This document shows, piece after piece, positions 1,281 to 39,369 of a stretch of 64,000 nt of DNA. The notes below the pieces were generated by a model that saw only the letters and a list, made by a program, of their open reading frames with translations, did not search any database and had not been told where the DNA came from. Numbering within the stretch: position 1 is the first letter of the stretch; each line of letters starts with the position of its first letter. Location: contig NW_020844645.1 of the NCBI RefSeq assembly GCF_003704095.1, forward strand, positions 186,001 to 250,000, written 5' to 3'. A program made the position numbers and the translations under genes. The DNA is from Pocillopora damicornis. Taxonomy: Eukaryota.

Positions 1281-1470
1281 TATAAAAATTGCAGTCACGA
1301 GCTTTAGACTCATATTTTATTTAAGTATTATATTCAACTTGGTTTATTTTTAGCTAGTTGACTGATTACTACAGGGCTTTGTAATATCTGGAAAGGCAAA
1401 ATAAAATGTAGTAATTATTAAAGATTCCTTTTTTGTCGCGTAATATCTTGAGTAAAAAAAGCTAACTCCT

Positions 1471-1540
1471 TTGACGAAAGGCTAACCCTCGAAACGAAGC
1501 TTTAGACACTCTCTGCATACCGTGGCCAATGAACATCATC
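1471..1540 (+). repeat. Dispersed repeat with a degenerate hammerhead-ribozyme-like core (Penelope/retrozyme type)
   Basis: (T)TGACGA-aaggctaaccctc-GAAAC resembles CUGANGA..GAAA; a second copy lies inverted at ~55365-55448. Confidence 0.45.
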
Positions 1541-2784
1541 AACTCAAACGAAATTATCTTACAACCCCTTCCCCCCCTCCCACCACTTCACCACCTACTA
1601 AACACAGCAGCAGAGTTTCTTTAGAAATTTTCCCTCATTACTCCTCTGAGTTTGGAACTTTGTGGTTTATTGCACTACCACGTTTATTTGGTTATGCCTG
1701 TCTCTTAAAGCTTTTTTAACTTTTCAGAATAACACGCTTTAAAAATGTATTACTTTTATCATTTTCTACCATCATTTATATTATATCTCTCATTTTCTTT
1801 CTAATAATCTCTCTAGAGTTGTGGTATTTTCAGGGATGAGAGGTTACGGAAAACCTAGGAGAATCTAAAAAAGAGTGAAGAGATCTTGATTAGACATTTT
1901 CCTCACGCGTCTAATCCATGCAGCGTCCATCAGCAGCAGCAGTCCTTGTTCTGCTCATGGCTGAACGTTTCTGGAGCTTGCGTAGTCAAAGTTTCGTGGT
2001 TCTAGATGGCTGACATTCTTATAGCAAGCCAAGTTTTTCGATTTTCTATTTAAATGGCGTGACATTAGTTAATATTTTCAAAGTTCTTGTTTGTCGAGTC
2101 TCGAATAGTAAAGTCACACATGAAGATTCATTGACGGATATTTTTGGAGTCATAGTACAAACTAATACGTTCCCTTTCAGTTCCGTCCTTTCGTAACTTA
2201 ACTGCGGTACGCAGGCGTGGCCAGTAAAAAAGTGTCATCTGCTGTGCAATAATTTTCATGCTGCGTGATAGCCTTCCCAGGTGTTCAATTAGTAAAACGA
2301 AGTGCGCCAGTAAACGGCACGATAAGAGCGGAGGAGTGAAAGAACGAAGGGGGGCTTGGTTCGGGTGACTGCGGCTTCCAATGCTCCCGTCATCCACAAT
2401 CTAGGAATGCCTTCTCCTCTAGGATATATTCATTCTCCAAGATAACACCCAACTCAGTCATTTGCTTGAATATTCTTTTGACGAAATGCACTGCAATGGG
2501 TAACGCTGCAGATTTTCTGCGCATGCCCAGCGAAGAGACCGCGCTAAAATAGGCATCTTCCTTTTTACAAAATTTTGTGCCTCACGAAACTAGTTAGTGA
2601 TAAACCATGAAGCAAAAGTAACGCACCCACAAGAAACATAGCAACAGATCGCTTCTAAATAAAAGACGTTACATTTTATTGCAACAATCCTTCACTAGCT
2701 TCTTTGAAGTTCTATGAAAGCTATTTTCATTGATAACCCTTTTTTGGGGTTACTAGTGATACTATCAGTATTTGGAGTTATGTA

Positions 2785-5547
2785 CTAAGAACAGGTTCCA
2801 GTTTTGGCCATTGTTTCAATCTTTTCTGCCAACTCGAGGCAGTAAAGCACTCGTTTCTTGTCTTGAGCAATTTCATCAGAGCTGCGCTCCCCCCGTACCT
2901 CAGAGAGAAATATCTCTAGATCCCTTGCAAACAGTCCCTTGTGGCCAGGGGGAGGTGGACCAGGGGGTTTGGAAACAGGCGCTGGTGTCACAGTAGTACC
3001 ATCTTCAAATTTATACTCCTGGGATGCTTGCCTTGGTTTCCCACCACGTACTCGTTCAATTATCCAAGTTAATGGCCTACAAAATGATTTATAATCAAAA
3101 AATAATTCAGTTGGGCAAAATGCAGCCCCAGTAACCATAACCTTCAACATAACTTTTGGAGACACCCTGCTTTTTTTCAATAAAAAATAACAATTACAAA
3201 ACTTCCCCCTTCTCATTACGACAAAATTTGCCTTTTGGTATGTATGAAGGGGGAGCAATTGAAGGCAAACATGGAATATAGTCATATATTCTTCCACAGA
3301 ATTGCTTTCAAAACATTTTTGCCAAGAGTATGTTCATCAATCAGCCCACATAATATAAATATGTCCACTGCAATTTGTAATAGATAAAAATTGTTACTCT
3401 TTCACGACAAAACACCCCACTACATTTTTTTCATTTTTGCACTCTCTTCTTAAGGGGTCTGGAGTCATGCTCCCCTGAAAAAAAATGAAATTTGAAACTC
3501 TCTAAAGACAATTTCTAGCACTCTGGGACAGATTTGAATTGTGTAACTTTCTTTAGCCGGACAATTGTATCACAATCAATAAAAGAGGCTAATTTTCTGA
3601 AATGTCTAACTTACCTGTTGTCTAAGGTGTGTAATTTACAAGTAAGGCGATGAAGATCAGTTTCATGTTCAAAGTGAGCTTCTTGTAATGATAGCTCACC
3701 AAACAAATCATACAAAATCTCCAATTGTGAAATTCCAGAGAAACTTGGAAACCCAGCTCGCCTTATGTCAGCGATCCACTCCTTGAGAAATCTGGCATCT
3801 AGACGAATGGTACCCTCAATAAAAGGAACATTTTTGTTTTGAATAGCGTGCTTCATATCCTTGTGGGAATCAAGAAGAAGAGCTATGTCTTCAACATGAC
3901 AGGTCAACCCTGAAAACCGAAGAAAAAAACTTCAAAACCATTCCACAATATGGCTCACTGAATGGAAACTCTACTTTGTTTCTAGGAGGGAATTTTACAA
4001 TCTTAGCCAACACAACCACAAACCAAAAACAAGGGGGGTGAAAATGGAAATTAAAAGCAACTGGCAGGAAAAACGGCCCTTATAGTAACTTATTTAAGAA
4101 CATAAAAATAACAGTTCAAAAAATGCTGTGAAAATGAACAGGTTGCAGTCCCCTATTACCAGGCCCTTCTAAATCAGCTTATACAAACAGACCATTAGTT
4201 CCAGTAGCCATTTTATATAGTCTTGACATAATATTTTTCCCCACAAGATCTCCCATACTATACAACGTCACAAAAAGGAAGCAGAAAATCAAATTATTTC
4301 TAATTCTCAAATTATTTCCACGCATAAAATATATCATGAAGAAACATCTGTATATTAAGTAAGCCTGATGTAAATTATTTCACATTCTTATCACACCCAA
4401 GGACACACATTAAACCTATAACTATATTCAGGTATTTCACAGTTATATACAGAAAATTTTATGTACATACCTTTACTTTCTGCTAAATTAAAGATCTTTT
4501 TACCACCCTCCGCTGTCAAACATAGAGGAAAATCCACTAAAACATGCTTTCCATGTTCTAGGATTTTTCTGTAAAATGAAAATTGTGCTATAAGAGAATT
4601 GGCCAAAAGGAAATAATAAGGACACAGAAGATAGAGCCTTCCACAATACCTATAACATATGCTAATTAACCACTACATTATTACATCTCCCAAGTTTTGA
4701 TGAATTAGGAAGAAGAAAAAGTCATTTATAAGATCATGATCACCTGGCATACTCTTCATGGGTGTCATTTTCTGTACAAATGACAAAAGCATCCACATCA
4801 TCTCTTGTCAAGGCTTCGTCCCAGTCTAGAACAGGTAGATCATCTTCTACTTGCCTCCTATTAAAATTATTAAATAAATGAAATCACCTAAAAAGTATAA
4901 TCAACTACACAAAATAAACCATCCACAGAACTAAATAGAATTAATTTAACCTATTTCATTCAAAAATAACTTTAAGCATACCTTCATTCATGCAAAGGTA
5001 ACTGTGGGTGACTAAAAAATATCACAGACTTACTTGAATACTTCTGATCAAATTTGTGCTGTAGGCAGGGTCAAAAGACTCACGGGTTTTAAAATCCTTT
5101 TTAAAACAGTAAACTAAATTACATTCTTCTCAGCTCTCTTTCAATGGAAACTAACTCGAGATCAAAGAATTAAACTACCAAACCCTACTACACAGCAAGC
5201 TGTTTAAATCATCATAACATGCGATGGAATATCCGTCCTCCATCCTTCACACCCCTCCTCCCCATTCCCGCCTGTCATGAACTCTAGATGGGCTTTTAAA
5301 GAGCTATATAATTCTGGGGTTGCTTCCGCCATCTACTTTGAGGGAAAGAAGCAAACGATTATGAAATGGCGTGCGTAAGTGTATTACCCAATAAGTTAAC
5401 AAACACTGAATCCGATCAATCTCACCTGGATATCACTCCACGAAGAACAACACTGTCTCCTAAAACGTTCTGCTTCAAATCTCTTACTCTGACTTTTCCA
5501 GCGATTCCCAATCCAACAACCACGATACCTAAAGGCTTTTCCGTCAT
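2785..5547 (-). CDS. BLVRA: Biliverdin reductase A; exons 5547-5426, 4857-4744, 4568-4471, 3909-3615, 3076-2785
   Basis: Spliced frame MTEKPLGIVVVGLGIAGKVRVRDL..VISRRQV..AFVICTENDTHEEYARKILEHGKHVLVDFP..RPLTWIIE..LFARDLEIF is collinear with BVR-A; GT-AG introns with compatible phases. Confidence 0.9.
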
Positions 5548-6031
5548 ATCTATTCAATCTCCACCTTCCTCCTCTTGAAAGCCACACGAAAAATTAGCGT
5601 CGTCACATTTTCCGCTTTATAAAGACATCTTACATAACAATATCAGCTGTGAACCTTGTTATTTTGAGGCCAATTTTTTTAATATACAGCTGTGCACACA
5701 AGATCAAGATGAAAAAAAAAGAAAATAAACTATATTTCAGGAAAATGACAAAGCTGTTGTACTAAAAAAGTCGTCTTTGTGCCAACCTATGAATTTTAGC
5801 TGGAAATTTGTGCTCTAGTTGCGTGACTTCGTGACAGGGGCGAACTTGTTCCAACTCTCCTCGGTAAGAGATCGTCCCCAGAATGCTCCGGCCTCGGAGA
5901 GCTACATGAACACCGCACCCTGTTGGAAGAAGTGAAGGAAGTTGGATTGTTTGACGGAAATTTAAGATCGCGTGATTTCTTCAGCCTGGCAAGAAGTGAT
6001 TGTACTTTCGCCTCAGCAATGAGTAGTCGCC
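5548..6031. promoter_or_regulatory. Putative bidirectional promoter between BLVRA and the NLR
   Basis: Divergent start codons at 5547(-) and 6032(+), 484 nt apart. Confidence 0.45.
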
Positions 6032-9000
6032 ATGGAAGTCGTGAAGGAGTATTTACTCGCAAAATACTTCAGTCCTTTTGGATATATTGTGGCAGTTTTC
6101 CATCTTTTAGCATTGACAGCACTTACCACAGCCGCTGGAGTCTTAAGAACGAGCGAGCGTCGAAGATTCAGCTGTCCTTCTTCTCCTGATTCTAAAGACG
6201 ACTGTCTAAGGCAATATGACAAACTGGTCTACTCTGGTTTGCCATTCTATGGATTTGTTCTGTTTTGTTTTGCGTCCGTTTTGACAGTGTGTATCGCCTA
6301 CTCCTGGTGTTTTGTGAAATCGCGAGTCGATGAGATTGAAATCGCCTTGAAACCAAATCCAGAAAGCCCTCGCCGTCGGCCTAGAGTGAAAACCCGCCGA
6401 GTGTTCTGGTCTTATTTTGTTCATCTTATTTTGCGATTTTTTGGGGGGATTGTGTTCATTATTTTGCAGAACTCTGTGTTTTATTTAAGTGGATTTCCAG
6501 CAGAATTTGTCTGTTTTACTCAAACAGTGAAGGGGGCAGCAAATTCCACAAATGTTAGTACGACCAAAGAAAATTCCTTAGCCATCAACTGTGATAACTC
6601 CATTGCATCTGACAATGCTGTCTACGCGAGAGGAATTTGGATAGTGAACATTCTATTTACGTTGCTTGTGTTTGGAGAGATATGCTATCTTTCGTTGCGA
6701 GCAATACAGAGAAAACAGTTCATCTTCGATTCCGAATTCTGTGAGAGGCACTTTTTTAGCAAGGGTAGGAACCCTATTGCGCTGAGCGAGTTGACATTCC
6801 GGACGAGACAACGAATACGCGAAGAAACAGAGATCCTTGAACCTTTAATTGCTCAGCCAGAAATAGAGAGAGTCAGACTTTTGGATGACGCTTTTGTCGA
6901 TCTTGTTATTTACAGTGGAAGAGCATGTAGCGAATTCGCTGACTTGTTGAAAAGACACGAAATATATGATATATATTTAAAGCCCCAGTATGGATCAATA
7001 GCCATAAAGAAAGTTGATGAGCTTTTTCTTCCAAATGAAGATACTCGAGATCCCCGCAAAATTCTCGTGGTTGGTCGCCCCGGCATCGGAAAGTCTCTGC
7101 TTTGCACGAAACTGTCGCGTGACTGGAGCAAGAGTGATCTTTTGCGTGACAGTGACAAAATCTTTCAACATCTGTTTGTGTTCCAATTCAGATGGTTCAA
7201 TACCGAGACAATAGAGAAGATATCTCTCAAACAGTTGTTGAGTCGTTTGTATTCAGAAGGTAGCATGGACAGTGAAGTCTTACAGCATATTTTAGACAAC
7301 CCTGAGCGAGTGCTATTTGTTTTTGATGGCTTGGATGAATTTAAATACCACGAACGCATTCTGGAGGATGAAAGGGCACATGCTGGAAACAGTGCAACAG
7401 AAGAAATGCCATTTTCAGCTCTTTACGTGAAGCTGATGAAAGGAAAGCAGCTTTCTGGGGCCACGATTTTGACCACGTGTAGACCAAATGTTGTGCAGAG
7501 TGTTGCACATTTGCCATTTGACAGGAAGGTTGAGATTATGGGATTTACTCCAGAGAAAGTCCACAAATATGTACTTAAATTTTGTGCACATGATCCAGAG
7601 ACAGTGAACAGAATATGGGGTCATATCAGCAGCAATTTAGAACTGCTCTCTTTGTGCTACATTCCTGTCAACAGTTTTATTATCTGTTCCCTTTTAGAAA
7701 AGTTGATCAAACTTCAACAACATTTAGGAAATACTCTACCAGCAACTTCAACTGACATTTATGAAGGAGCTCTGAGGCTGTTCATTTTCAAGCATCACCC
7801 AGAATTTAAGAGGAAGTTTTTAACAAAGGATTATCTTCTTGGAAATGTGGGCCTCCCTGATCAAGTTGAAGAAACTTTGAACCGGGTTGGATCATTGGCA
7901 AAAACAGGAATTCAGGAGAGACGACTGATGTTTGACTCAGTGGAGGTGAAGGGAATAGAAGACTGTGGGTTGTTCAATCGTATGCCAGATTGTGAAGTTT
8001 TACCTTTCAAATTGAAGTCCCAATTCTGCTTCATTCATTTGACTCTTCAGGAATTTCTTGCTGCCAAAGAAATAGTGAAGATGGATTCCAAGGACATTAG
8101 TAATTTCATCCTCACAAATGCTTCAGATCCAAAGTGGCACTTGGTACTTCAGTTTGTGGCTGGCCTTCTGCGTGGACAAACAAATGAGGCAGTCAGCAAT
8201 TTTGTAAACCTCCTTTGTGACTCTTTAACATACATAACTCTTTGTGACTCTTTAACATTTAGTAGTAAATCCAAACAAGAAGCTGTTCTTATGATGAAAT
8301 GTTTGCATGAGTACAATGATGCTACAATTGTGGAAAAGGCAGCATCACTTCTACAGAAAAATGAAACTTTCAACAATAAGATAGATTTATCTTATTCTGA
8401 AATAACACCTGTTGACTGTGCAGCAATTGTTTTCTTTATTAACAAACTACACAACCTTATGGAGTTGAACCTGTCCTCTAACAATATATCAGACCAAGGT
8501 GTTTCATTCCTGTGCAGTGTAGTTAGAGATGGACACTGTAATCTCACCACACTACACCTTGGTTTCAATGACATACAGGACCAAGGTGTTTCACAACTCA
8601 GTGAAGCTTTAAGGGATGCTAACTGTAAACTAACTAAGCTGAGGCTTCCTGGTAACTACATAACATACCAAGGTGCATCACATCTGCAGGATGCACTTAA
8701 AAATGCAAATTGTAAACTCACCAAGTTGGACCTTGGTGGCAATAGTATGGGGGATATAGGTGTTTCACGGCTGAGTGAAGCACTCAAAGATGTAAATTGC
8801 AAACTTGAAAAGTTAAACCTAGATGAAACTGATATTACAGACCAGGGTGTTTTCCATTTGTGTGAAGCAATTAAAAATGTAAATTGTAAACTGACCAAGT
8901 TAGACATTAGTGGAAACATGATATCTTTCCATGGTGCATTAAGCATGTCTGTTGCACTTAAAGATGTGAACTGTAAACTTACAAAAATGAATCTTGAAGT

Positions 9001-10030
9001 AAATGACATCGGTAACTTGGGTGTATTTCACTTAAGTGATGCACTTAAAGATGAAAACTGTAAATTTACACGGTTAGATCTTACTGGTGTTAAGATGGGA
9101 GATGAAGGTTTAGCACATCTGTGTGATGCTCTGATAAATGAAAATTGTTTAGTTACTGATTTGAACCTAAGTCACAATGCAATAACAGGGCAAGGTGTTT
9201 CCTACCTGCAAACTGCGCTCAGAAATAAGAATTGTAAGCTTTTGCAGTTGAACCTAGCTATGAATACACTAAGGAACACTTCATATTTAATTAGGAAACT
9301 TACTGAATCACTGATCAAGGGGGATTCATTGAATTTTTATGGTGAACAAAGTGTTCTGTTCCCAATGTCTAGCGCACTCAGAGATGAAAATTGTAAACTA
9401 GTGAAGCTTGATCTGATATCAACTGGTGTGGAAGATGGTGACTTATTCTACTTGTGTGGTGCACTGAAAGACATGAATTGTAAACTCACTGTGTTGTACC
9501 TTGGTGGCCATCTCATAACAGATGAAGGTTTGCAACACCTGTGCAGTGCACTTGAAGATGTAAATTGTAAACTCACTGAGTTGTTACTCATGAGTCGCAA
9601 TATAACAGATCAAGGTGTTCCCCTTTTTTTTACTGCAATTAAACATAAAAATTGTAAACTCACCAAGTTGAAAATTGAGTTTCCAGAGGTAACAGATGAA
9701 GGTTTTTTACACCTTTTGGTTGCTCTTAAAGATGTAAATTGTAAACTCATCAAGTTGAAAATTCAGTTTCCAGAGGTAACAGATGAAGGTTTTTTACACC
9801 TTTTGGTTGCTCTTAAAGATGTAAATTTTAAACTCACTAAGTTGTCACTAGAGGGAAATGAGTTAATGGATCAGTTCATACCACATCTGTGCTCTGCACT
9901 TGAAGACCCAAACTGTAAACTCATTAACTTAGACCTTACACAAAACAAATTTACAAAGCAAGGTAAAAACATGCTACATCAAGCACTAAAAAGTGCGAAT
10001 AGAACAAGTCATATCAAAGTCGAAGTATAG
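6032..10030 (+). CDS. Intronless NLR: N-terminal 4-TM connexin-like domain, NACHT NTPase, ~18 ribonuclease-inhibitor-type LRRs (1332 aa)
   Basis: gccATGG start; four hydrophobic segments in aa ~15-222; Walker A GRPGIGKS (7073-7096); Walker B LFVFDGLDE; LTTCRP; CYIP; winged-helix FIHLTLQEFLAA; 29-aa LxLxxNxIxDxGxxxLxxAL..NCKL repeats. Confidence 0.95.
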   Translation: MEVVKEYLLAKYFSPFGYIVAVFHLLALTALTTAAGVLRTSERRRFSCPSSPDSKDDCLRQYDKLVYSGLPFYGFVLFCFASVLTVCIAYSWCFVKSRVDEIEIALKPNPESPRRRPRVKTRRVFWSYFVHLILRFFGGIVFIILQNSVFYLSGFPAEFVCFTQTVKGAANSTNVSTTKENSLAINCDNSIASDNAVYARGIWIVNILFTLLVFGEICYLSLRAIQRKQFIFDSEFCERHFFSKGRNPIALSELTFRTRQRIREETEILEPLIAQPEIERVRLLDDAFVDLVIYSGRACSEFADLLKRHEIYDIYLKPQYGSIAIKKVDELFLPNEDTRDPRKILVVGRPGIGKSLLCTKLSRDWSKSDLLRDSDKIFQHLFVFQFRWFNTETIEKISLKQLLSRLYSEGSMDSEVLQHILDNPERVLFVFDGLDEFKYHERILEDERAHAGNSATEEMPFSALYVKLMKGKQLSGATILTTCRPNVVQSVAHLPFDRKVEIMGFTPEKVHKYVLKFCAHDPETVNRIWGHISSNLELLSLCYIPVNSFIICSLLEKLIKLQQHLGNTLPATSTDIYEGALRLFIFKHHPEFKRKFLTKDYLLGNVGLPDQVEETLNRVGSLAKTGIQERRLMFDSVEVKGIEDCGLFNRMPDCEVLPFKLKSQFCFIHLTLQEFLAAKEIVKMDSKDISNFILTNASDPKWHLVLQFVAGLLRGQTNEAVSNFVNLLCDSLTYITLCDSLTFSSKSKQEAVLMMKCLHEYNDATIVEKAASLLQKNETFNNKIDLSYSEITPVDCAAIVFFINKLHNLMELNLSSNNISDQGVSFLCSVVRDGHCNLTTLHLGFNDIQDQGVSQLSEALRDANCKLTKLRLPGNYITYQGASHLQDALKNANCKLTKLDLGGNSMGDIGVSRLSEALKDVNCKLEKLNLDETDITDQGVFHLCEAIKNVNCKLTKLDISGNMISFHGALSMSVALKDVNCKLTKMNLEVNDIGNLGVFHLSDALKDENCKFTRLDLTGVKMGDEGLAHLCDALINENCLVTDLNLSHNAITGQGVSYLQTALRNKNCKLLQLNLAMNTLRNTSYLIRKLTESLIKGDSLNFYGEQSVLFPMSSALRDENCKLVKLDLISTGVEDGDLFYLCGALKDMNCKLTVLYLGGHLITDEGLQHLCSALEDVNCKLTELLLMSRNITDQGVPLFFTAIKHKNCKLTKLKIEFPEVTDEGFLHLLVALKDVNCKLIKLKIQFPEVTDEGFLHLLVALKDVNFKLTKLSLEGNELMDQFIPHLCSALEDPNCKLINLDLTQNKFTKQGKNMLHQALKSANRTSHIKVEV
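9650..9845 (+). repeat. Near-identical 87-nt (one LRR unit) tandem duplication within the NLR
   Basis: caagttgaaaattgagtttccagagg.. at 9664 recurs at 9751; KLKIEFPEVTDEGFLHLLVALKDVN / KLKIQFPEVTDEGFLHLLVALKDVN. Confidence 0.9.
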
Positions 10031-10424
10031 CACGTAAAAGAGAAAGCAATTTGAAATTACCATGATTGAGGTGCAGCTCTGTGTCAAGAGCTTAGCAAAC
10101 CAGTCAGTGCAACACTAAGACCAGATTTCATAAGCATATAATGAGGTTTCATGGTGTTATATTGGTAGTTCTTATCTTAATATACTGTACAGGTGTTCAT
10201 GTACACTTGTCATGAGATTGTATGACACAGAATGTAATTATGTAATTATTCTGTTTGTCATAACTTTTAAAATTATAGTCAACAAAGATTGGTTTACTGA
10301 TTATAATAAAGTGACATGTAGAACATGTATTTCTTAGTGATGTCTGTGCTGTTGGTGTTGTGTAAAGTCAATCAGGTATCAGCAGTGGCTGCTACCATAG
10401 GGGAAGCTTATGTGTCCTTCAATT

Positions 10425-37900: not shown

Positions 37901-37959
37901 TGTACATGAGCAGGGGGCTTAGCATTGAAAGAATACACTTTGATGAAGAGCACTGGAAG

Positions 37960-39369
37960 AAAAACAGAGCAATGGAGGAAGGTTTAGCCCAATGCCTGGA
38001 GGGAGCAGGTCCTGCACTGTAAATCCCTTGTCTGCCATTACTGAATCTCCATTCTCAAACTTTTGATCTAAAATACCACTGTGTAGAACAATTTCCCTGT
38101 CTGAGATGTGTCCAGTGTAAACCTGGCTCACAAATGACAGTGCCCCACCTGGGGTTATTCCAACAAGGGCTTTCAGAGTGGTGTTATTTTTACAGGTACT
38201 AAAAAGTTCACTATTTAAACAAAGGCTGCAAGGCATTTGGCATTTAACTTTGGTGCAGTCTATTGTTATTCTAGTTGAGGAATATTTTTCTTTAAACTGC
38301 TCTGGCATGTGTTTGTTTATTTTTTCTCTAGAGGGCCACATGGGTACATCCTTAAGCCTTAAATATAAAAGGTTGACCCAGGTTATTATTATCCTGCTCA
38401 TTGTAGCTTGAGATATTCCATAGAGATGAGCAAGATGTTCCTCTGCGAAACCTTGTCTTAATCTAAACAAAGTAATAAAAAGTTCCTCTTTAGGATGCAG
38501 TAACCTTGGTCTTCCAGGCTTTGGAAATGTTTCTATGTATTCATCATTTTCTCTAAGAACAATTGTATCCTGGCCTGTGGATGATGAGTGCCAATAACGA
38601 ATATTTTCGCCATTCTCACCAGGGTCACATAAATTGTATAACGCATCAAATATTTCTTCATTAGCGAATCCAGTGTAAAACCACATAGACTTACTAAACC
38701 GATCTAAGGAAAAAGATTTCTTCTCCAAGTGATTGTACCGGGATGTCAAGTTGACAAGTTGTTGTTTTACTTCATTCAGTTTTATCACCAGGGCATTTGT
38801 TTTCTCCTTTTGTTTTTCAAGTTTATTTATCAACTCCACTACTTGTCTTTTCAGTTAATTCACATGCTTTCTTCTTGCGAAGTTCTAGACTCTTGAAAAG
38901 TACAATCGACCGCTAGGACTTCGTACGCCTTGTCAACATTCAAGCTAGTGTTACATGTATTTACTTCGAGCTTTTCGTCGGCAACCTTGTCAACATTTAA
39001 GCTTGTACCATTTACCTCGAGCTCTTCGTTGGCAACCTGAGGCCCCGCTTTAGAGACTACATGCCGGAGTTTTGGTAGTTCTCGCTTCTTAGGAGAATTT
39101 TTCTTCCACGAAAAAATGGAAGAAACAGCGGTAGGATGAAGTGTTCTTCTGCCAGCAAGTGTGCTCTGAAAATCTGAATCCTTGAAGTGTCTCGAGCAAA
39201 CCCTCGTGTGCCAAGATATCCTGAAGTGGCGACCAACATCTCTTCGAACAGCTCGAATCCATGCAGCTAATAGGTCTTTATTTTTTGGAAATTTGTGGAA
39301 AGATATATTCCAGTCTTCCTCCCGATAGACCTTTTTCGTGCAATTCGGAACACAGCAGTTTTACGGCAT
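37960..39369 (-). pseudogene. THAP + HTH + Harbinger-type DDE transposase, disrupted
   Basis: MP*NCCVPNC..SFHKFP..WIRAVRR..RVCSRHF (THAP, stop at codon 3); LFITLFRLRQG..LAHLYGISQAT; IDCT; MADKGF; C-terminus missing. Confidence 0.85.

What the first reader, a model, noticed from the sequence alone, without database searches (positions are those of the whole stretch)
6032..10030. Connexin-like four-TM domain fused to NACHT-LRR: candidate NLR-gated large-pore channel
Seen: one ORF joins a ~225-aa 4-TM N-terminus to an intact NACHT and ~18 LRRs, with no CARD/PYD/DEATH domain. By-eye comparison with connexin 26 (recalled sequence): loop 1 E42-RRR-F-S-C48..K..C58-LRQ-Y vs E-QAD-F-V-C..K..C-YDH-Y; TM3/loop 2 VFWSYFVHLILRFF..F..Y..GF..FVC vs LWWTYTSSIFFRVIF..F..Y.GF..LVKC; TM4 C-DNS-IASDNAVY..IWIVNILFTLLVFGEICYLSLR vs [34 protein letters not shown]. 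Established: connexins form hexameric large-pore channels and are regarded as chordate-restricted; NLRs oligomerise through NACHT; plant ZAR1 resistosomes form channels; LRRC8 couples a pannexin-type pore to LRRs. TM-bearing cnidarian NLRs have been reported, but I do not know whether the domain is recognised as connexin-like. Inference: ligand-induced NACHT ring assembly builds or gates a pore (ion/ATP flux, cell death), a one-protein sensor-effector that also bears on the origin of connexins. Four-TM topology puts NACHT-LRR in the cytosol, as required.
Basis: partly seen in the sequence, partly recalled or inferred. Interest (0 to 1): 0.95.

Follow-up and report, generated by a model that had tools for sequence, protein, structure and literature searches.

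The report
Coral connexin-like channel fused to NLR
This coral gene really does join a connexin-type membrane channel domain to a NACHT-LRR immune receptor, but a June 2026 preprint already describes the family, tested some of its members, and lists this exact protein, so the scan has rediscovered a known thing.

Summary
Window 6032-10030 (+) is one intron-less 1332-aa ORF of Pocillopora damicornis (pdam_00014791, UniProt A0A3M6U6Q1). It has a 4-TM N-terminal domain of about 235 aa, an intact NACHT, and 17-18 LRRs of 29 aa. There is no CARD, PYD or DEATH domain.

The connexin reading is supported by tests.
- A 44-sequence family profile hits only connexins in the PDB: the top 34 hits, best Cx31.3 at E 5.5e-10, with the next family at E 0.15.
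- 30 of 44 family members hit Pfam Connexin, and two paralogues score above the gathering threshold.
- A pLDDT-90 model gives connexins only in the Foldseek rows shown to rank 48 (E 1.5e-5), and Cx50 first by VIA (Z 15.7, 2.8 Å).
- RNA contigs from four studies are collinear across TM, NACHT and LRR.

It is not new. Butler et al. (bioRxiv 10.64898/2026.06.13.731801) describe anthozoan connexin-like NLRs and show hemichannel activity. One tested channel is pmCxL30, which appears to be this genome's paralogue L011. Their Supplementary Table 1 lists A0A3M6U6Q1. The scan had also noted this family on other DNA of this genome.

Still open: no LRR-bearing full-length CxL-NLR has been assayed, so NLR control of the pore is untested. 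Specific to this gene: the CO2-sensing lysine is replaced by R123, and one LRR unit varies in copy number.

The parts
5768..6031 (+). Probable 5' UTR. The RNA contigs begin at 5768 (X1), 5812 (X13) and 5936 (X6). The start codon sits in a strong Kozak context, gccATGG.
6032..10030 (+). Single-exon CDS of 1332 aa: CxL-NACHT-LRR (pdam_00014791 / A0A3M6U6Q1 / XP_027039693.1 family)
6032..6736 (+). Connexin-like (CxL) domain, aa 1-235: N-terminal helix, TM1-TM4 and two extracellular loops
6035..6067 (+). N-terminal helix, aa 2-12, with four charged residues (E2, K5, E6, K11). It is the counterpart of the pore-lining, voltage-sensing NTH of connexins.
   Evidence: role inferred
6074..6145 (+). TM1, aa 15-38
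6146..6232 (+). Extracellular loop 1, aa 39-67, with the family-invariant C48 and C58. E41, R43, F46 and Y62 are conserved among the paralogues.
6233..6319 (+). TM2, aa 68-96, with invariant P71 at its start
6398..6484 (+). TM3, aa 123-151. R123 occupies the position of the carbamylated K140 of pmCxL30. Y128 is conserved across the family, and Q146 among the paralogues.
6485..6604 (+). Extracellular loop 2, aa 152-191: a beta-hairpin, Cys C161 and C187 (C187 family-invariant, C161 in at least 90% of members), and the only two N-glycosylation sequons of the domain (N171, N174)
6605..6709 (+). TM4, aa 192-226, with conserved N206, E216, Y219 and R223
6710..7057 (+). Cytosolic juxtamembrane helices and the linker to the NACHT, aa 227-342. 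F230 is invariant among the paralogues.
7058..7591 (+). NACHT NTPase domain, aa 343-520. Walker A is at 7073-7096 and Walker B at 7310-7339.
8036..8335 (+). NLRC4_HD2-like helical domain, aa 669-768 (weak Pfam match, E 1.3e-5, below the cut-off)
8447..9997 (+). LRR array, aa about 806-1322, with an 87-nt / 29-aa period and about 17-18 units. One unit is disrupted (aa 1067-1119).
9603..9844 (+). Recent tandem duplication of one LRR unit (87 bp, 2.8 copies, 87% matches). This is the site of all the 29-aa length differences between the 1303-, 1332- and 1362-aa forms.
10305..10310 (+). AATAAA polyadenylation signal. The RNA contigs end at 10224-10315.

Best explanation
The gene encodes a membrane-embedded NOD-like receptor. 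Its N-terminal 'effector' module is a connexin-superfamily (CxL) channel domain instead of a CARD, PYD or death-fold domain. The four helices insert with both ends in the cytosol, so the NACHT NTPase and the LRR sensor hang beneath the membrane. The two extracellular loops are tied together by two disulfides and loop 2 is glycosylated. By homology with tested paralogues, the CxL domains assemble on their own into a large-pore hemichannel, probably a hexamer or heptamer. This channel does not dock into gap junctions. It opens on depolarisation and lets ATP and glutamate out. The most likely role of the fused NACHT-LRR is to couple a cytosolic danger or microbial signal to this pre-assembled channel, or to use the channel ring as a ready-made oligomerisation platform. 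The result would be a one-protein sensor plus danger-signal release device in coral immune cells. Shown here: the architecture, connexin homology, connexin fold, expression, and conservation across Scleractinia. Shown by others on paralogues: membrane localisation, hemichannel permeability, and voltage/CO2 gating. Inferred: that this particular protein conducts; that it is CO2-insensitive, because the carbamylated Lys is Arg (R123); and that NACHT-LRR modulates the pore.
For: Architecture. Connexin homology by sequence: all 11 paralogue domains hit Pfam Connexin, and L010 and L011 score 41.6 and 41.8 bits against a gathering score of 31.3. 30 of 44 family members hit it at E<=0.01. The family profile against PDB sequences gives connexins only in the top 34 hits: Cx31.3 at 5.5e-10, and Cx32, Cx46 and Cx43 around 1e-6 over TM1-TM4. 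The next family scores 0.15, and no innexin, pannexin, LRRC8 or CALHM appears. Fold: with the AF2 model (pLDDT 90.3, pTM 0.83), every Foldseek row shown to rank 48 is a connexin, with E 1.5e-5 to 2.8e-4 and TMt up to 0.76. VIA gives Cx50 at Z 15.7, 2.8 Å over 170 of 177 residues. One transcript: collinear RNA contigs cover 5768-8321 (0 mismatches), 5500-8320 and 6590-9695 in different studies, with ends near an AATAAA signal. Topology: four hydrophobic segments only, and the sequons lie only in loop 2. Conservation: the CxL domain is 60-72% identical across scleractinian orthologues, similar to the NACHT, while the LRRs diverge fastest. Function of paralogues: pmCxL30, whose quoted N-terminus matches L011 in this genome, and the NACHT-bearing pmCxL62 and edCxL50 form voltage- and/or CO2-gated hemichannels (ATP and glutamate release was shown for edCxL50). 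No gap-junction coupling was seen in the three cnidarian constructs tested for it, pmCxL30, edCxL50 and plCxL60. This exact protein is in their list.
Against: The window protein itself scores only 13 bits on Pfam Connexin. Its membership rests on the family profile and the model. No construct carrying LRRs has been assayed (Supplementary Table 7), so a full-length protein might be held closed or might not traffic to the membrane. The homo-oligomer prediction gave no answer. A six- or seven-fold channel ring need not match the stoichiometry of NACHT rings, which are 5- to 12-fold in solved NLR/STAND assemblies (established knowledge). RNA contigs cannot by themselves prove a single transcript or exclude DNA carry-over (caveat stated).
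Confidence: 0.7

Rival explanations
1. Resistosome-like model, the reader's 'builds a pore' version. CxL protomers stay unassembled until ligand-bound NACHT domains oligomerise, and only then does the ring of TM domains form a channel, as with plant ZAR1.
For: NLRs generally work by induced oligomerisation (established knowledge). The NACHT has intact Walker A and B motifs. No LRR-bearing construct has been tested.
Against: The standalone CxL protein (pmCxL30) and the NACHT-bearing CxLs form functional channels in HeLa cells without any immune ligand. Connexins assemble through their TM and extracellular domains. The CxL domain keeps those parts.
Confidence: 0.12
2. Anchor or scaffold only. 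The CxL domain merely tethers and pre-clusters the NLR at a membrane and has lost conduction. Signalling goes through NACHT-LRR partners.
For: This subfamily (the window protein and L002) is the most diverged from connexins in the genome, at 13 bits on Pfam against 20-42 bits for the other paralogues. The CO2-sensing Lys is lost.
Against: The channel-typical elements are under purifying selection: the charged N-terminal helix, the loop cysteines, and the conserved polar residues in TM3 and TM4 (Q146, N206, E216). The CxL domain is as conserved as the NACHT across coral families.
Confidence: 0.12
3. The 4-TM domain is not a connexin. It is an innexin/pannexin/LRRC8/CALHM-type domain or a convergent four-helix bundle such as claudin or tetraspanin.
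For: There are two cysteines per loop, as in innexins and pannexins, not three. With the first, poor model (pLDDT 64), LRRC8A and pannexins tied with connexins. With the good model, VIA still places LRRC8A and pannexins at Z 12-15.
Against: The sequence profiles find only connexins and no innexin, pannexin or LRRC8 hit at E<=1. Foldseek with the good model shows only connexins down to rank 48. Identity and coverage are highest for connexins. Claudin-like folds appear only at Z about 8. The preprint's network analysis separates CxLs from innexins.
Confidence: 0.03
4. Assembly or annotation artefact. The TM part and the NLR are separate genes joined by chance in this assembly.
For: None found.
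Against: The ORF is uninterrupted. More than 100 orthologous proteins with the same architecture come from independent assemblies of Pocillopora, Stylophora, Oculina and Desmophyllum. RNA contigs span the junction in several studies.
Confidence: 0.01

Closest known systems
Anthozoan connexin-like NLRs (CxL-NLRs) of Butler et al. 2026, bioRxiv 10.64898/2026.06.13.731801
   Same: It has the same architecture (N-terminal CxL, NACHT, LRR), the same single-exon structure, the same two cysteines per loop, and the same genus. The exact UniProt entry A0A3M6U6Q1 is in their Supplementary Table 1. The 13 copies they count in P. damicornis equal my 13 genome matches.
   Different: This member was not tested functionally. 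It carries Arg (R123) where pmCxL30 has the carbamylated K140, so it lacks the published CO2 motif. It is one of the two paralogues in this genome that are most diverged from Pfam Connexin.
pmCxL30 (A0A3M6TUS9), the standalone coral CxL hemichannel; locus L011 in this genome
   Same: The CxL domains are homologous (about 25% identity, E 1.4e-8). Both have a charged N-terminal helix, four conserved Cys, and the TM4 Arg partner (R232 / R223).
   Different: pmCxL30 has no NACHT-LRR (257 aa). It has K140 and is CO2-sensitive. It passes the Pfam Connexin gathering score (41.8 bits).
Vertebrate connexins (Pfam PF00029; e.g. Cx31.3/GJC3, Cx26, Cx32, Cx43, Cx50)
   Same: Four-TM fold with an N-terminal helix, a helix in E1 and a beta-hairpin in E2. 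The TM3-E2 and post-E2/TM4 sequence motifs are shared. Profile E reaches 5.5e-10, Foldseek E 1.5e-5 and VIA Z 15.7. The best sequence match, Cx31.3, is itself a hemichannel-only connexin.
   Different: It has two Cys per loop, not three. By the HMM alignments, the first and last E1 Cys positions and the last E2 Cys position are kept. Loop 2 is longer and glycosylated (Cys-to-Cys span 27 aa here, family median 25.5). No gap-junction docking was seen in cnidarian members. The C-terminal tail is replaced by NACHT-LRR.
LRRC8/VRAC (a pannexin-type pore fused to cytosolic LRRs)
   Same: A large-pore 4-TM channel with a C-terminal cytosolic LRR domain on the same chain. LRRC8A is a strong structural neighbour (Z 14.9).
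   Different: There is no detectable sequence relationship. LRRC8 has no NACHT NTPase, and its pore domain is of the pannexin/innexin lineage.
Plant ZAR1 / CNL resistosomes and other pore-forming NLR effectors
   Same: An NLR directly coupled to a membrane conductance.
   Different: In ZAR1 the pore is made only after oligomerisation, from soluble coiled-coil helices. Here the channel module is a constitutive integral membrane domain of an unrelated family.

Membership tests
Connexin superfamily (PF00029 / IPR038359) | Significant sequence-profile similarity to connexins | tested here: met
   The family profile A2 against the PDB gives Cx31.3 at 5.5e-10, and the top 34 hits are all connexins. 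30 of 44 members hit PF00029. The window protein alone scores only 13.2 bits (E 0.076), below the gathering score of 31.3. Its paralogues L010 and L011 are above it. UniProt carries IPR038359 on this protein.
Connexin superfamily (PF00029 / IPR038359) | Connexin fold: N-terminal helix, four long TM helices, a helix in E1 and a beta-hairpin in E2 | tested here: met
   The AF2 model has pLDDT 90.3. Every Foldseek row shown down to rank 48 is a connexin. VIA gives Cx50 at Z 15.7, rmsd 2.8 Å, 170 of 177 residues aligned.
Connexin superfamily (PF00029 / IPR038359) | Three conserved cysteines in each extracellular loop | tested here: not met
   There are two per loop (C48, C58; C161, C187), and 38 of 44 members have 2+2. 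According to the preprint, the vertebrate epsilon-clade connexins also have two, so this feature is not universal.
Connexin superfamily (PF00029 / IPR038359) | N and C termini cytosolic, loops extracellular | tested here: inconclusive
   Four hydrophobic segments, and N-glycosylation sequons confined to loop 2 in 37 of 42 members, fit this topology. It has not been measured.
Connexin superfamily (PF00029 / IPR038359) | Hexameric large-pore (hemi)channel activity | not testable with these tools
   The complex prediction gave no answer. Activity has been shown experimentally for paralogues and homologues only.
Connexin superfamily (PF00029 / IPR038359) | Head-to-head docking into gap junctions | not testable with these tools
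   The three cnidarian CxLs tested did not couple cells. The long, glycosylated loop 2 here argues against docking (inference).
NLR (NACHT-LRR) receptors | Central NACHT NTPase with Walker A and B | tested here: met
   PF05729 at E 2.6e-26, aa 343-520. GRPGIGKS at 348 and VLFVFDGLDE at 427.
NLR (NACHT-LRR) receptors | C-terminal leucine-rich repeats | tested here: met
   LRR_6 at E 3.8e-35. About 17-18 units of 29 aa.
NLR (NACHT-LRR) receptors | N-terminal death-fold effector (CARD/PYD/DED), as the public name 'NLRP12-like' implies | tested here: not met
   No PYD, CARD or DEATH match at E<=10. The N-terminus is the CxL domain. The database name is a naming artefact.
Innexin / pannexin / LRRC8 | Sequence-profile similarity to these families | tested here: not met
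   No such hit at E<=1 in the PDB profile search or at E<=10 in Pfam. Only fold-level similarity was found (Z 11-15).

The most novel reading that the evidence does not exclude
The NACHT-LRR is an allosteric gate of the connexin-type pore. Ligand recognition by the fast-evolving LRRs and nucleotide exchange in the NACHT would rearrange a ring of six or seven cytosolic modules under a pre-assembled hemichannel and open it. That would give pathogen-triggered ATP/glutamate release or ion flux from a single polypeptide. It would be an animal NLR with a built-in channel effector, mechanistically between LRRC8 gating and plant resistosomes. No published construct has contained the LRRs, so this is untested.
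Probability: 0.3. Interest if true: 0.8.

Novelty: already known. Interest (0 to 1): 0.3.

Why it matters
Connexins were long taken to be a chordate invention. Their presence in corals, welded to an innate-immune receptor, moves their origin back to the cnidarian-bilaterian ancestor and suggests an ancestral immune role for hemichannels. That case has now been made and partly tested by Butler et al. (2026). What this locus adds is modest. It is an independent, tool-based confirmation on a member that falls below Pfam's own threshold. It gives evidence that this member is expressed as one intron-less transcript. It predicts that this member is CO2-insensitive, because the sensing Lys is Arg. 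It also shows that its sensor array gains and loses one LRR unit between alleles or species. The question that really matters is still open and directly testable: does the NLR part control the pore?

Tried and rejected
1. A single-sequence phmmer search of aa 1-245 against PDB sequences gave only a chance topoisomerase match at E 0.68. The homology shows up only with profiles.
2. The first AF2 model, from 11 paralogues, was poor (pLDDT 64). Its Foldseek matches were weak (E about 1e-2) and did not separate connexin from LRRC8 or pannexin. A 44-sequence alignment replaced it.
3. Complex prediction with four copies of aa 1-235 returned 'no answer' (score 0.00). The alignment was not used and the controls were not run. 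This is no evidence either way.
4. PF27087, a precomputed Pfam tag on most homologues, is not in the local library. It is absent from homologues that have the N-terminal domain but lack LRRs (P0065, P0073, P0109), so it is not the CxL domain.
5. I looked for flanking direct repeats as signs of retroposition or TE-mediated copying. I found only a 26-nt chance pair and a hairpin repeat 3' of the gene.
6. Literature searches for the earlier papers that annotated connexin domains on cnidarian NLRs (the preprint's refs 32 and 33) returned nothing further in the held library. Its reference list is not held.
7. Neighbouring ORFs in the window are unrelated to the finding: a short-chain dehydrogenase fragment and a DDE transposase.

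Full report
**What is there.** The window carries one uninterrupted ORF at 6032..10030 (+) of 1332 aa. Pfam assigns NACHT (aa 343-520, E 2.6e-26), LRR_6 (E 3.8e-35) and a weak NLRC4_HD2-like helical domain. No CARD, PYD, DEATH or TIR appears even at E<=10. Walker A (GRPGIGKS, 348) and Walker B (VLFVFDGLDE, 427) are intact. The C-terminus is a very regular array of about 17-18 LRRs with a strict 29-aa (87-nt) period. The first about 235 aa hold the only four strongly hydrophobic segments of the protein. Exact-sequence look-up places the window in Pocillopora damicornis. Public records call the gene pdam_00014791 / UniProt A0A3M6U6Q1 / 'NLRP12-like' XP_027039693.1. The 'PYD' in that name is an annotation habit and is not a feature of the protein.

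**Is the N-terminal domain connexin-like?** On its own, the domain's only Pfam match is Connexin at E 0.076, which is sub-threshold. A single-sequence search of PDB sequences finds nothing meaningful. The genome holds 13 matches to the domain. I aligned 11 of the paralogous domains (A1).
- They share four invariant cysteines, two per predicted extracellular loop, and conserved polar residues in TM3 and TM4.
- All 11 hit Pfam Connexin. L010 and L011 score 41.6 and 41.8 bits, above the curated cut-off of 31.3.
- The A1 profile searched against PDB sequences returns 20 hits, and all are gap-junction proteins.

A profile search of 1.84 billion cluster representatives found 324 related clusters. 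The domain almost always starts at residue 1-8, and the proteins range from about 240 aa to about 1300 aa. From these I built a 44-sequence domain alignment (A2).
- Its profile gives Cx31.3 at E 5.5e-10, and Cx32, Cx46 and Cx43 around 1e-6, over TM1-TM4.
- The top 34 hits are all connexins. The first other family (rhodopsin) scores E 0.15.
- No innexin, pannexin, LRRC8 or CALHM hit appears.
- 30 of the 44 members hit PF00029 at E<=0.01.

**Fold.** The first AF2 model (11 sequences, pLDDT 64) matched only large-pore channels, but weakly, and it did not separate connexins from LRRC8 or pannexins. With A2 the model reached pLDDT 90.3 and pTM 0.83.
- Every Foldseek chain shown down to rank 48 is then a connexin, with E 1.5e-5 to 2.8e-4 and target-normalised TM up to 0.76.
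- The Foldseek-independent VIA search puts Cx50 first (Z 15.7, rmsd 2.8 Å, 170 of 177 residues), followed by Cx26, LRRC8A, Cx32, Cx40.1 and the pannexins.
- Unrelated helical bundles score Z 10.5 or below.

The HMM alignments keep the first and last E1 Cys positions and the last E2 Cys position of connexins. C161 lies beside the first E2 Cys but is not aligned to it. From my own knowledge of the Cx26 structure, which I did not test here, this fits two of the three inter-loop disulfides, C53-C180 and C64-C169.

**One transcript?** I laid contigs from four RNA-seq studies on 5500-10500. They are collinear with the genome: 5768-8321 with no mismatch (X1), 5500-8320 (X9) and 6590-9695 (X6). No joint separates the TM part from the NACHT. 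The breaks fall in the repetitive LRRs. Coverage ends at 10224-10315, just at an AATAAA signal (10305-10310). The start codon has a strong Kozak context. Contigs cannot prove a single molecule, but together with the continuous ORF and more than 100 orthologues of identical architecture, a chimeric artefact is very unlikely.

- It reports connexin-like (CxL) domains in anthozoans and two protostome phyla, mostly as N-termini of NACHT-LRR proteins and typically in single-exon genes.
- It validates the homology by HHpred (6L3U, 99.95%) and Foldseek.
[quoted passage not shown] The three cnidarian constructs tested for dye coupling formed no gap junctions.
- Its Supplementary Table 1 lists A0A3M6U6Q1, this very protein, with the InterPro connexin superfamily signature.
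- Its count of 13 CxL genes in P. damicornis equals my 13 matches.
- Its tested channel 'pmCxL30' carries a P. damicornis accession, and its quoted N-terminus MDAEALKKI is that of my locus L011, a 257-aa standalone paralogue.

The scan itself had already noted the family on other pieces of this genome. One follow-up reached the same verdict.

**What is specific to this member.**
1. The residue that aligns with the carbamylated K140 of pmCxL30 is R123. This is the same change as the K140R mutant that abolished CO2 sensitivity. The partner Arg (R232) is kept as R223. By inference, this channel is voltage-sensitive but not CO2-sensitive.
2. The N-terminal helix carries four charges, as in pmCxL30.
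3. Both N-glycosylation sequons of the domain lie in loop 2, and 37 of 42 family members have one there. The Cys-to-Cys span of loop 2 is 27 aa here, with a family median of 25.5. This fits a non-docking hemichannel, as with glycosylated pannexin 1 (established knowledge).
4. The 1303-, 1332- and 1362-aa variants differ only in the copy number (1, 2 or 3) of one recently duplicated LRR unit at aa 1207-1265.
5. Across scleractinian orthologues, the CxL domain (60-72% identity) is about as constrained as the NACHT (64-85%), while the LRRs evolve fastest (33-62%).

**Mechanism.** The best-supported reading is a membrane-embedded NLR whose effector is a pre-assembling connexin-type hemichannel, with NACHT-LRR in the cytosol. 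Standalone and NACHT-bearing CxLs conduct without immune stimulation. This makes a ZAR1-like 'assembly builds the pore' model less likely than allosteric modulation of an existing pore, or use of the channel ring as a scaffold. None of the published constructs contained LRRs, and my oligomer prediction gave no answer. Coupling between the NLR and the pore therefore remains an open and testable hypothesis.

**Verdict.** The connexin-NLR reading is supported. The gating mechanism is untested. Novelty is 'already known'. Interest is low to moderate as a discovery, although the biology is remarkable.

Noticed in passing
L011 (G000:C2122:354702-358406), ORF 1444..2217 (-): A 257-aa standalone connexin-like protein that begins MDAEALKKI. 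This is the N-terminus the preprint quotes for its functionally tested channel 'pmCxL30' (accession A0A3M6TUS9_POCD...). So the tested protein seems to be a P. damicornis sequence, although the preprint labels it P. meandrina.
   Followed up: partly
window 9603-9844: An 87-bp tandem duplication of one LRR unit. Homologues of 1303, 1332 and 1362 aa differ only by 1, 2 or 3 copies of this unit. NCBI's 1303-aa 'isoform X2' on the same contig may be a predicted 87-nt intron, an allele or a collapsed repeat.
   Followed up: partly
window 10448-10590: An inverted repeat with 53-nt arms (83% complementary, 37-nt loop) just 3' of the gene. RNA depth jumps about tenfold from about 10420, and many contigs with different upstream sequence join there. 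It is probably a small interspersed (MITE-like) repeat.
   Followed up: no
window 5500-5763: A stretch with very high RNA-contig depth (630 in X1 against 54 over the gene), separated from the gene's contigs in three of four runs. It could be a repeat or a separate abundant RNA just upstream.
   Followed up: no
window 37919-38839 (-): An ORF with HTH_Tnp_4 and DDE_Tnp_4 domains (E 3e-15 and 5e-21): a Harbinger/PIF-type transposase.
   Followed up: no
window 17256-17822 (+): An ORF with a short-chain dehydrogenase (adh_short) domain, E 6.7e-17. It is probably one exon of an SDR gene.
   Followed up: no
one search hit list: Most homologues carry precomputed Pfam tags that are newer than the local Pfam copy (PF27087, PF28571, PF25372). 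I could not look these up. PF27087 tracks with the presence of LRRs, not with the CxL domain.
   Followed up: partly
window 6019-6021: An out-of-frame upstream ATG lies 13 nt before the main start codon, in a weaker context. It may be a short uORF.
   Followed up: no
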